From Macrostomum lignano (taxonomy: Eukaryota), in the NCBI GenBank assembly GCA_002269645.1, contig NIVC01003870.1, positions 1-42,138 on the forward strand: a stretch of 42,138 nucleotides of DNA, in the 5' to 3' direction. This document shows positions 6,213-36,234 of this stretch, piece by piece. Numbering within the stretch: the first letter of the stretch is position 1; each line of letters begins with the position of its first letter. The notes beneath the pieces are model-generated. The model was not told where the DNA came from. It was given only the letters and a program-made list of their open reading frames with translations, and did not search any database. The position numbers and the translations under genes were made by a program.

Positions 6213-6513
6213 GTCACATCGGCGCAAAACGATGATTATGACTCCGGCGGAGCAGTTAGCGGCAGAGGCGGCGGTGGTGGCAGTGGAATCGGGTCTCCGT
6301 CGATTCCACTGTCCCTGACCATCGCCATCGTCTGCTGCTGCTGTTGTTGCTTCGGCGGAGTGGCCGTGGCAGCGGCAGGTGGAGGCGGGGGCGCCAGCAG
6401 CGGTCTCGGAGTATCGGGCAGCTTTCTAGACTGCTACAGACAAACTGCCAGCAGCATGTCGCTGGCCAAGGCTGCCGCCGTTTTGATCAAACTTCCTACA
6501 AGTTTGAAACTTG
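6213..6513 (+). CDS. First coding exon of large gene (Gly-rich, signal/anchor segment)
   Basis: Acceptor tattttag; open frame [13 protein letters not shown]...[26 protein letters not shown]...; donor g|gtcag in phase 1. No in-frame ATG before the hydrophobic segment. Confidence 0.6.

Positions 6514-36234: not shown

What the first reader, a model, noticed from the sequence alone, without database searches (positions are those of the whole stretch)
6213..36234. Giant pentaspan membrane protein joining an EGF/TNFR ectodomain to a DC-STAMP- or prominin-like core
Seen: about 1200 aa N-terminal region (Cys-rich module, EGF-Ca, TNFR-like repeat, further Cys clusters, sequon-rich beta region), then 5 hydrophobic helices. 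Positive-inside loops follow TM1 and TM3, sequon-bearing helical loops follow TM2 and TM4, and [10 protein letters not shown] precedes the last TM. Established: a C-x(1-3)-P motif before the last TM and large helical loops occur in DC-STAMP/OC-STAMP/DCST/Sneaky/SPE-42 cell-fusion proteins; five-TM two-loop topology occurs in prominin and tweety. None of these, as I know them, carries an EGF/TNFR ectodomain. Inference: an uncharacterised invertebrate receptor coupling ligand binding to a fusion- or membrane-shaping module.
Basis: partly seen in the sequence, partly recalled or inferred. Interest (0 to 1): 0.88.

Follow-up and report, generated by a model that had tools for sequence, protein, structure and literature searches.

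The report
Uncharacterised flatworm EGF/TNFR multi-pass membrane protein
This is a real 24-exon Macrostomum lignano gene for a 2026-residue membrane glycoprotein that joins EGF/TNFR-type modules to a multi-pass helical core; the core belongs to a small, undescribed flatworm and ribbon-worm family and shows no detectable relationship to prominin, tweety or DC-STAMP.

Summary
The stop codon is at 36232-36234. Position 6213, however, is an internal splice acceptor.

The window is a Macrostomum lignano contig. The gene is already deposited as hypothetical protein BOX15_Mlig001903g9 (2026 aa). It has 24 GT-AG exons spanning 2592-36234. The five upstream exons and exon 6 add a signal-like segment and two more hydrophobic helices, so seven TM segments are predicted, not five.

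The same architecture occurs in Tubulanus polymorphus (Nemertea). The core also occurs in Echinostoma caproni and in unnamed eukaryotic contigs. In one of these, a single ORF joins ectodomain, TM1 and TM2.

Every test for prominin, tweety, DC-STAMP or HAP2 membership was negative or inconclusive:
- Pfam on 15 family members gave no hit.
- hhalign against human PROM1 gave 1.2% probability.
- PDB sequence searches found nothing.
- Foldseek on two low-to-medium-confidence AlphaFold models found nothing significant.

I also found a conserved C-terminal [ST]-x-V motif, four conserved ecto-loop cysteines and an Ig-like juxtamembrane module.

Verdict: a genuine, uncharacterised, lineage-restricted adhesion- or receptor-type protein of moderate interest. 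Its function is inferred only.

The parts
2592..36234 (+). Whole CDS of BOX15_Mlig001903g9 (P0023, 2026 aa), 24 exons: 2592-2891, 3190-3333, 3640-3760, 3837-3883, 5028-5138, 6213-6513, 6612-6707, 7681-7896, 8219-8341, 8494-8568, 11239-11310, 12245-12363, 12993-13201, 13326-13509, 15016-15075, 15323-15542, 20292-20384, 20944-21666, 26072-26233, 31238-32489, 33023-33515, 33842-34168, 34967-35162, 35798-36234
   Evidence: The spliced sequence (6081 nt) translates exactly to P0023, and all 23 introns are GT-AG.
2592..5138 (+).
   Evidence: Exact mapping and hydropathy. The Tubulanus protein has the same TM, linker and second hydrophobic segment in the same order, but without sequence similarity.
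6213..6513 (+). Exon 6. It encodes the rest of the linker and the second hydrophobic helix TM-B (6321-6377, [19 protein letters not shown]).
   Evidence: A ttttag acceptor sits at 6211-6212, and the coding frame has no ATG before the helix.
7681..8568 (+). Three phase-1 module exons: EGF-like (7746-7895), calcium-binding EGF (8219-8341, DIDEC...), TNFR-like Cys repeat (8494-8568)
   Evidence: Pfam EGF_CA, EGF_3, cEGF and TNFR_c6. The Tubulanus protein has the same module order.
11239..26233 (+). Exons 11-19: about 615 aa of ectodomain with conserved Cys clusters and a sequon-rich beta region. No known domain was found.
   Evidence: Collinear with paralogue P0002, with Tubulanus P0007 and with the ORFs of L001 and L006. 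No Pfam or PDB sequence hit.
31238..32489 (+). Exon 20: juxtamembrane beta module (31240-31503), TM1 (31597-31653), basic cytoplasmic loop, TM2 (31834-31890), and helical ecto loop 1. Loop 1 carries a near-invariant Cys (in 32047-32061) and the W-L-x-F-P-x3-F-N-x-S motif (32317-32352).
   Evidence: Alignments A1 and A5 and hydropathy. In the AF2 model the beta module has pLDDT 70-87 and gives local Ig-like or MG-domain Foldseek matches with rmsd about 3 A.
33023..34168 (+). Exons 21-22: end of loop 1 (disordered, low complexity), TM3 (33258-33314), basic cytoplasmic loop, TM4 (33893-33949), and the start of helical ecto loop 2
   Evidence: tblastn against P0001 and P0002, hydropathy and the AF2 secondary structure.
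34967..36234 (+). Exons 23-24: three loop-2 cysteines including [10 protein letters not shown] (35099-35128), TM5 (35875-35931), a Q-rich cytoplasmic tail, C-terminal ESHV (36220-36231), and stop 36232-36234
   Evidence: The C-x-[FY]-[LIV]-P motif is conserved wherever this region is known. The C-terminal [ST]-x-V is conserved: SETKV or SETRV in P0010 and four hand-spliced relatives, ESQV in Tubulanus.
10703..10805 (+). It is not in the annotated CDS. It may be a cassette exon or a relic of the second TNFR-like repeat seen in Tubulanus.
   Evidence: The acceptor at 10702 is out of phase. The only in-phase acceptor (exon start 10710) is weak. Similarity to the Tubulanus CAPGYFVASQ is weak.

Best explanation
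Shown here: the interval is most of a single 24-exon Macrostomum lignano gene (2592-36234). It encodes a 2026-residue multi-pass membrane glycoprotein.

The predicted order of parts is:
- a signal-like segment and a small N-terminal ecto part;
- TM-A, an acidic cytoplasmic linker, and TM-B;
- an ectodomain of about 950 aa, made of an EGF-like module, a calcium-binding EGF, a TNFR-like repeat, conserved Cys-rich and beta-rich regions of unknown fold, and a small Ig-like beta-sandwich next to the membrane;
- a conserved five-helix core.

In the core, the TM1-TM2 and TM3-TM4 pairs are joined by basic, sequon-free cytoplasmic loops. TM2-TM3 and TM4-TM5 are joined by long, helical, glycosylatable extracellular loops. 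The core matches no Pfam family. It defines a small family seen in flatworms (Macrostomum, Echinostoma), a nemertean (Tubulanus) and a few unnamed eukaryotic assemblies.

Inferred mechanism: it acts as a cell-surface adhesion or receptor scaffold.
- The distal Ca-EGF and TNFR-like modules bind an extracellular partner.
- The two helical loops form a stalk stapled by two disulfides. One is local in loop 2. The other links the invariant loop-1 Cys to the Cys of the C-x-F-L-P motif.
- The conserved C-terminal [ST]-x-V tail docks the protein to PDZ scaffolds at a specialised membrane domain.

Its topology resembles prominin/tweety, but it is not a demonstrable member of that family or of DC-STAMP.
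For: Gene structure:
- The deposited protein P0023 maps exactly to the window, with 23 GT-AG introns.
- My independent hand splicing of the 3' exons agreed with it.

One polypeptide:
- Tubulanus XP_074657570.1 has the same order of EGF, cbEGF, TNFR, ecto modules and five TM segments, plus two N-terminal hydrophobic segments.
- The L006 ORF at 2711-4474 runs without interruption from the beta ectodomain through TM1, TM2 and loop 1.

Family size and spread:
- Only 18 hits at E<=1e-3 among 1.84 billion representatives.
- Named sources are M. lignano, Echinostoma caproni and Tubulanus polymorphus.

Topology:
- Sequons and Cys occur only in the proposed ecto parts.
- The proposed cytoplasmic loops have a K/R excess and no sequons, in two phyla.

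Helical loops:
- AF2 predicts helices of 51-110 residues with pLDDT 70-91 in the Tubulanus model.

Cysteine pattern:
- Echinostoma lacks the first two loop-2 Cys but keeps the loop-1 Cys and the CxFLP Cys.

C-terminal motif.

Beta module: local Foldseek matches to MG, FNIII and Ig-like domains with rmsd about 3 A.
Against: - There is no expression, localisation or binding data of any kind. The function is inferred from domain content alone.
- Both AF2 models are of low to medium confidence overall (pLDDT 53 and 60, pTM 0.27 and 0.38). The packing of the helices, and therefore the 'stalk', is not established.
- The N-terminal extension (exons 1-5) is not similar in sequence between Macrostomum and Tubulanus. 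In Tubulanus the second hydrophobic segment follows two Met residues, so it could be a signal peptide of a shorter isoform. Seven TM segments is a prediction only.
- The M. lignano C-terminal codons lie inside a 21-bp tandem repeat.
- One paralogue fragment ends in NKL rather than [ST]-x-V.
Confidence: 0.6

Rival explanations
1. The five-helix core is a very divergent member of the prominin/tweety superfamily. The protein would then be a receptor-coupled membrane-bending (protrusion or vesicle-forming) protein.
For: - The core has the same gross topology: N-terminus outside, TM helices in a 2+2+1 pattern, two long extracellular loops after TM2 and TM4, and a cytoplasmic C-terminus.
- The extracellular loops are predicted as long helical hairpins continuous with the TM helices. 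This is as in the solved TTYH structures and the predicted PROM1 model (PMC10659291).
- The only hhalign-aligned stretch with PROM1 is TM2 against TM2.
Against: - No Prominin or Tweety Pfam hit appeared in 15 members at E<=10. Human PROM1 itself still detects Tweety at E 1.6e-5.
- hhalign probability was 1.2%.
- The intracellular loops are 56-203 aa, against the <25 aa used to define prominins (PMC10659291).
- Foldseek gave TTYH2 at E 6.4 and TM 0.05 for model 1. For model 2 no TTYH chain appeared among the listed matches.
- The whole protein has two extra TM segments.
Confidence: 0.15
2. The core is DC-STAMP/DCST/Sneaky/SPE-42-like, and the protein takes part in cell-cell or gamete fusion.
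For: The UniRef name 'Hapless 2' on paralogue fragment P0002 hints at a fusion role.
Against: - No DC_STAMP Pfam hit in any member.
- The cytoplasmic tail has no cysteines, so the C-terminal RING finger that SPE-42 needs for its function (PMC3053230) is absent.
- No PDB sequence or fold hit.
- The 'Hapless 2' name has no backing. There is no HAP2-GCS1 Pfam hit and no HAP2 hit in the PDB with the ectodomain profile.
- Sister fragments of the same family carry unrelated UniRef names: ZP, ABC transporter, Peptidase_M3, Sushi and PHM7_cyt.
Confidence: 0.03
3. The 2026-aa CDS is an annotation chimera. A small type-I membrane protein (exons 1-5) would be wrongly merged with the EGF/TNFR multi-pass gene, or the ectodomain and the core would be separate genes.
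For: - The N-terminal extension is not conserved in sequence between phyla.
- The Tubulanus second hydrophobic segment is preceded by Met-Met and looks like a signal peptide.
- Older M. lignano gene models of this family are fragmentary and mis-spliced (P0006).
Against: - Exon 6 begins at a good acceptor and has no in-frame ATG before its hydrophobic helix. All junctions are in phase with consensus GT-AG.
- A second M. lignano copy (P0024, 2027 aa) in the same 90% identity cluster is modelled at almost the same length.
- The Tubulanus RefSeq model independently has the same arrangement of TM, linker and hydrophobic segment.
- Continuity of ectodomain and core is shown by a single ORF in L006.
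Confidence: 0.08

Closest known systems
Prominin (CD133, Pfam PF05478) and Tweety/TTYH (PF04906)
   Same: The C-terminal core has five TM helices in a 2+2+1 pattern. The N-terminus is outside and the C-terminus inside. Two long, glycosylated, largely helical extracellular loops follow TM2 and TM4.
   Different: - There is no sequence or profile similarity (Pfam; hhalign 1.2%).
- The intracellular loops are 56-203 aa instead of <25 aa.
- Loop 2 is much shorter than loop 1.
- An ectodomain of about 950 aa with EGF/TNFR modules precedes TM1, and two extra hydrophobic segments lie before that.
- No significant Foldseek match to solved TTYH structures.
DC-STAMP / OC-STAMP / DCST1-2 / Sneaky / SPE-42 (PF07782)
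   Same: A multi-pass membrane protein with sizeable extracellular loops and conserved loop cysteines.
   Different: No DC_STAMP domain hit. No C-terminal cytoplasmic RING or Cys cluster, since the tail has no cysteines. The number and spacing of TM helices differ. There is no evidence for a role in fusion.
Modular adhesion receptors with a PDZ-binding tail (Crumbs, neurexins, Flamingo/CELSR-type adhesion receptors, polycystin-1)
   Same: A large ectodomain built from phase-1 EGF-type modules, and a cytoplasmic C-terminus ending in a class-I-like [ST]-x-V motif. This is the functional analogy I favour, and it is an inference.
   Different: The membrane anchor is an unrelated, undescribed five-helix (seven in all) unit with helical ecto loops. 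There are no cadherin, LamG, GAIN/GPS or PKD domains, and no homology beyond the EGF and TNFR modules.
Tubulanus polymorphus XP_074657570.1 (uncharacterized protein LOC141910730) and Echinostoma caproni VDP66292.1
   Same: True homologues. They share the core motifs (TM2 Y-x2-FR-x-Y-x3-FTF, M-x-AC, W-L-x-FP-x3-FN-x-S, VDF-x2-FL, C-x-F-L-P). Tubulanus also has the same EGF, cbEGF and TNFR ectodomain and the same N-terminal arrangement.
   Different: Identity is only 17-23%. Tubulanus has a second TNFR-like repeat. The Echinostoma model lacks the EGF part and two of the loop-2 cysteines. None has been characterised.

Membership tests
Prominin (PF05478) | Match to the Prominin profile HMM | tested here: not met
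   No hit at E<=10 in P0023 or P0018, at E<=1 in P0002, P0007 or P0010, or at E<=10 in any of 15 core sequences. Positive control: human PROM1 scores 1028 bits.
Prominin (PF05478) | Profile-to-sequence homology with human PROM1 | tested here: not met
   hhalign of the 16-sequence family profile A1 against PROM1 gave probability 1.2%, with 26 columns aligned in TM2 only.
Prominin (PF05478) | Five TM helices in a 2+2+1 pattern, N-terminus outside, C-terminus inside | tested here: inconclusive
   This holds for the conserved C-terminal core. The full proteins of M. lignano and Tubulanus, however, have two further hydrophobic segments upstream, giving 7 predicted.
Prominin (PF05478) | Two small intracellular loops (<25 aa) and two large extracellular loops (curation rule in PMC10659291) | tested here: not met
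   Intracellular loops are 60 and 84 aa in M. lignano, 56 and 130 aa in Tubulanus, and 112 and 203 aa in Echinostoma. Extracellular loops are 278 and 164 aa.
Prominin (PF05478) | Shared three-dimensional fold | not testable with these tools
   The PDB copy holds no prominin chain, and no AlphaFold DB library is available. My own models are of low to medium confidence.
Tweety / TTYH (PF04906) | Match to the Tweety profile HMM | tested here: not met
   No hit in any member.
Tweety / TTYH (PF04906) | Structural similarity to solved TTYH structures | tested here: inconclusive
   In the Foldseek PDB search, TTYH2 7rtv_A ranked 15 with E 6.4 and TM 0.05 for the M. lignano model. No TTYH chain appeared among the listed matches for the Tubulanus model. 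With model pTM of 0.27 and 0.38, the test has little power.
DC-STAMP / DCST / Sneaky / SPE-42 (PF07782) | Match to the DC_STAMP domain HMM | tested here: not met
   No hit in any member.
DC-STAMP / DCST / Sneaky / SPE-42 (PF07782) | C-terminal cytoplasmic Cys-rich RING finger (8 conserved Cys in SPE-42; PMC3053230) | tested here: not met
   The cytoplasmic tail after TM5 has 0 Cys in M. lignano and 1 in Tubulanus.
HAP2/GCS1 (PF10699), suggested by the UniRef name of paralogue P0002 | HAP2-GCS1 domain, or sequence similarity to solved HAP2 ectodomains | tested here: not met
   No Pfam hit. The ectodomain profile A2 against all PDB sequences returned only a ribosomal protein, at E 0.73.
Calcium-binding EGF (PF07645) and TNFR Cys-rich repeat (PF00020) | Profile match above the curated cut-off, and the D-x-D/N-E-C start of cbEGF | tested here: met
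   In P0023, EGF_CA scores 33.4 bits (cut-off 27) and TNFR_c6 31.6 bits (cut-off 29.4). DIDEC lies at the exon 8/9 junction. The same domains occur in Tubulanus.
Saposin B (PF05184/PF03489), suggested by weak hits to saposin-repeat proteins | SapB_1 or SapB_2 match in loop 2 | tested here: not met
   Loop 2 alone gave no Pfam hit at E<=10. The hit P0015 is a 14-repeat prosaposin whose repeated 'VCNFLP' motif inflated the score.

The most novel reading that the evidence does not exclude
The conserved five-helix unit could be a highly diverged spiralian offshoot of the prominin/tweety superfamily that acquired a modular EGF/TNFR ectodomain, an extra N-terminal TM hairpin and a PDZ-binding tail. 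It would then be a ligand-gated or adhesion-coupled membrane-bending protein. Alternatively, it could be a truly new membrane-protein fold specific to Spiralia.
Probability: 0.15. Interest if true: 0.6.

Novelty: new variant of a known kind. Interest (0 to 1): 0.4.

Why it matters
The sequence is already public as a 'hypothetical protein', so the gene itself is not a discovery. What is new is the delineation of a small family, so far seen in flatworms, a nemertean and unnamed eukaryotic contigs.

Its features are:
- a multi-pass core found in no domain database;
- attachment to calcium-binding EGF and TNFR-like modules;
- four conserved ecto-loop cysteines;
- a conserved PDZ-ligand-like C-terminus.

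Macrostomum lignano is a tractable model, with RNAi, in situ hybridisation and transgenesis available, so the function can be tested directly. The family also occurs in a parasitic trematode (Echinostoma). A lineage-restricted surface protein of this kind could matter for parasite surface biology. If the core proves to be a remote prominin/tweety relative, it would extend that superfamily to receptor-like architectures.

Tried and rejected
- Word-indexed homology searches were nearly useless here. One search found one fragment. One search found only the window's own protein. One search found nothing. Low-complexity words saturated the candidate list. The index-free phmmer search found the family.
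- 'Hapless 2' (the UniRef name of P0002) is rejected. There is no HAP2-GCS1 hit and no HAP2 in the PDB search. Fragments of this one family carry six unrelated UniRef names.
- 'ZP domain' (P0006) is rejected, because there is no Zona_pellucida hit.
- The saposin-like reading of the VCNFLP region is rejected.
- PDB sequence searches with the core and ectodomain profiles found nothing.
- The PDB copy contains no prominin, so prominin fold similarity could not be tested.
- Foldseek on both AF2 models gave no hit below E 0.1.
- I tried to deepen the alignment with four full cores hand-spliced from loci L001, L003, L005 and L006.
- My own codon-usage scan mainly tracked GC content and missed the AT-richer upstream exons.
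- Literature searches for the locus tag and for HAP2 in Macrostomum found nothing relevant.
- The nested antisense ORF has no Pfam, PDB or contig record.
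Full report
1. WHAT THE WINDOW IS

The sequence is eukaryotic and repeat-rich. A profile search returned a 2026-aa protein that is 100% identical to my query and sits on a contig of exactly 42138 bp. It is hypothetical protein BOX15_Mlig001903g9 of the flatworm Macrostomum lignano (PAA49468.1; UniRef name 'EGF-like domain-containing protein'). 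The window is therefore that contig, and the gene is already deposited but uncharacterised.

2. GENE MODEL

I first spliced the 3' part by hand, using GT-AG rules and collinearity with the M. lignano fragment P0001. I then worked out the phase-1 module exons for EGF-like, cbEGF and TNFR.

The deposited protein maps exactly onto 24 exons between 2592 and 36234. All 23 introns are GT-AG, with good polypyrimidine tracts. The 6081-nt spliced CDS translates to P0023 without a mismatch. My hand-derived junctions coincide with it.

The coding frame there has no ATG before the hydrophobic stretch [19 protein letters not shown].

Five coding exons lie upstream (2592-5138). They encode a signal-like segment, about 115 aa with three sequons, a strongly hydrophobic helix (VAVLIAAAVAAAILIVIFV) and an acidic linker.

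The ORF at 10703-10805, which carries Cys residues and was probably counted as an exon, is not in the CDS. Its obvious acceptor is out of phase, and the only in-phase acceptor (10710) is weak.

3. IS IT ONE PROTEIN?

Three lines of evidence say yes.
- The splice phases are continuous, and a second M. lignano copy (P0024, 2027 aa) in the same 90% identity cluster is of almost identical length.
- The nemertean Tubulanus polymorphus RefSeq protein XP_074657570.1 (P0007, 1808 aa, E 1e-15 to the core) has the same order of parts. These are a hydrophobic helix, a linker of about 115 aa, a second hydrophobic segment, EGF, cbEGF, TNFR (Pfam), the same conserved Cys-rich and beta modules and five TM helices.
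- In an unnamed relative assembled from SRR23372229 (L006), a single uninterrupted ORF of 588 codons runs from the beta ectodomain through the juxtamembrane module, TM1, TM2 and loop 1. It aligns with window exons 18 to 20.

The N-terminal extension is the least secure part. It has no sequence similarity between the two phyla. In Tubulanus the second hydrophobic segment follows Met-Met and could serve as a signal peptide of a shorter isoform.

4. TOPOLOGY

Hydropathy gives seven segments in both M. lignano and Tubulanus.
- Sequons and cysteines are confined to three regions: the region after TM-B (949 aa, 35 Cys, 8 sequons), the TM2-TM3 loop (278 aa; 2 sequons, 6 in Tubulanus) and the TM4-TM5 loop (164 aa; 3 Cys).
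- The TM1-TM2 and TM3-TM4 loops have no sequons and a strong K/R excess (11/3 and 17/2).

5. THE FAMILY

An index-free phmmer search of 1.84 billion representative proteins with the 723-aa core found only 18 proteins at E<=1e-3. Two or three of these are spurious saposin-repeat hits.

Named sources are M. lignano (several paralogues and fragments), the trematode Echinostoma caproni (VDP66292.1) and Tubulanus. The rest are unnamed ENA, Logan or JGI eukaryotic contigs with 31-36% GC. From these I recovered four more complete cores with the same exon order.

Conserved features:
- a juxtamembrane module, C-x-G-Y-L-x-V ... C-P-x-x-F;
- TM2, Y-x2-F-R-x-x-Y-x3-F-T-F;
- in loop 1, E-L-x-R-Q, M-x-x-A-C (near invariant), an invariant W and N in W-L-x-F-P-x3-F-N-x-S, and V-D-F-x2-F-L;
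- TM3, L-D-x-L-L;
- in loop 2, C ... C ... C-x-[FY]-[LIV]-P.

Echinostoma lacks the first two loop-2 cysteines but keeps the loop-1 Cys and the CxFLP Cys. This pattern suggests one local disulfide and one disulfide between the loops. That is an inference.

The C-terminus ends in [ST]-x-V in all but one of the complete tails seen: ESHV (this gene), ESQV (Tubulanus), and SETKV or SETRV (P0010, L001, L003, L005, L006). This is the form of a class-I PDZ ligand (established knowledge). No binding has been tested.

6. TESTS AGAINST KNOWN FAMILIES

- Pfam finds only EGF_CA, EGF_3, cEGF and TNFR_c6. Nothing was found for the core or the rest of the ectodomain, in P0023, P0018, P0002, P0007 or P0010, or in any of 15 core sequences at E<=10. 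In particular there was no Prominin, Tweety, DC_STAMP, HAP2-GCS1 or Zona_pellucida hit.
- As a control, human PROM1 (sequence recalled, then verified at 1028 bits to PF05478) still detects Tweety at E 1.6e-5. hhalign of the family profile against PROM1 gives 1.2% probability.
- PDB sequence searches with the core and ectodomain profiles return noise.
- The tail has no cysteines, so there is no DCST/SPE-42-type RING (PMC3053230).
- The intracellular loops (56-203 aa) violate the <25 aa rule used to curate prominins (PMC10659291).

7. STRUCTURE

AF2 on the M. lignano core gave mean pLDDT 53 and pTM 0.27. On the Tubulanus core it gave 59.6 and 0.38, with 343 residues at pLDDT 70 or above.

Both models are almost entirely helical after a small N-terminal beta module. 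Both ecto loops form very long helices that are continuous with TM helices.

Foldseek against the PDB found nothing below E 0.1. TTYH2 appeared only at E 6.4 and TM 0.05, and no TTYH chain appeared among the matches listed for the better model. The recurrent local matches (65-70 columns, rmsd about 3 A, to complement MG, FNIII and GH2 beta-sandwich domains) fall on the juxtamembrane module and suggest an Ig-like sandwich.

The PDB copy has no prominin, and no AlphaFold DB library was available. Fold-level kinship to prominin therefore remains untested. Kinship to TTYH is unsupported, but the test was weak.

8. INTERPRETATION

Shown: a real, single, large gene for a multi-pass glycoprotein with a modular ectodomain. 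It belongs to a small family seen so far in flatworms, a nemertean and unnamed eukaryotic contigs, and its core is undescribed.

Inferred: it is an adhesion- or receptor-type surface protein. Its distal Ca-EGF and TNFR-like modules bind a partner. Its two helical loops form a disulfide-stapled stalk above a five-helix anchor. Its [ST]-x-V tail ties it to PDZ scaffolds.

The prominin/tweety analogy is topological only (probability of true kinship about 0.15). DC-STAMP kinship is essentially excluded at the sequence level. The HAP2 lead from a database name is unfounded.

9. VERDICT

The modules and helices are real, but the boundaries and the TM count are wrong.

The novelty is a new variant of a known kind (modular multi-pass surface receptor) with an undescribed core domain. 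Interest is moderate.

Noticed in passing
window 17364-18419 (- strand), inside intron 16: An antisense single-exon ORF of 351 aa with an ATG and a clear signal-peptide-like N-terminus ([27 protein letters not shown]). It has no Pfam or PDB sequence hit and no record as a called gene. It could be a nested secreted-protein gene or a chance ORF in a GC-rich stretch.
   Followed up: partly
window 36212-36399: A 21-bp tandem repeat (AAAATGAAGAATCTCACGTTT, 9 copies) begins inside the last codons of the gene. The sequence coding for 'EESHV-stop' is therefore repeated nine times into the 3' UTR. The conserved C-terminal motif sits in an expanding minisatellite.
   Followed up: partly
window introns: 4003-4920, 5659-6071, 6726-7573, 11683-12023, 15645-16071, 16329-16788, 19201-20285, 21677-22111, 24867-25834, 26286-27934, 28641-29686, 30838-31143, 33525-33821, 34582-34787: Nearly every sizeable intron of this gene carries its own micro- or minisatellite array (periods 4-124 bp, up to 117 copies). 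Several produce long stop-free pseudo-ORFs in all frames. They account for the strong local GC and AT skews.
   Followed up: partly
window 40206-40925 (- strand): An ORF with weak Tc1/mariner-type transposase similarity (Transposase_1 at E 5e-4, HTH_Tnp_Tc3_2 at E 9e-3, both below the cut-offs). It is probably a decayed transposon downstream of the gene.
   Followed up: partly
window 10703-10805: A Cys-bearing ORF ([18 protein letters not shown]...PQCV) between exons 10 and 11 weakly resembles the second TNFR-like repeat of the Tubulanus orthologue. It is not in the annotated CDS. It may be an alternative cassette exon (weak in-phase acceptor at 10710) or a decaying exon.
   Followed up: partly
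public records of the M. lignano paralogue fragments (P0001, P0002, P0003, P0006, P0027/P0028) and of Echinostoma P0018: Fragments of this single family carry unrelated UniRef names: ABC transporter domain, Hapless 2, Peptidase_M3 domain, ZP domain, Sushi domain and PHM7_cyt domain. None of those I scanned (P0002, P0006 and P0018) reproduces its name in Pfam. Such names should not be used as functional leads.
   Followed up: yes
window 31654-31668 (VRVCCRSR, just after TM1) and the same alignment column in homologues: One or two cysteines directly follow TM1 on the cytoplasmic side in 9 of 13 aligned family members, followed by basic residues. This is a candidate S-palmitoylation site.
   Followed up: no
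L001 (ENA ERZ25072999), L002/L003 (ERZ24900295), L004/L005 (ERZ25069853), L006 (SRR23372229): Unnamed AT-rich eukaryotic assemblies hold complete orthologues with the same exon order. They have a strikingly conserved C-terminus, ...[FY]SET[KR]V. The organisms could not be identified with the tools at hand.
   Followed up: partly
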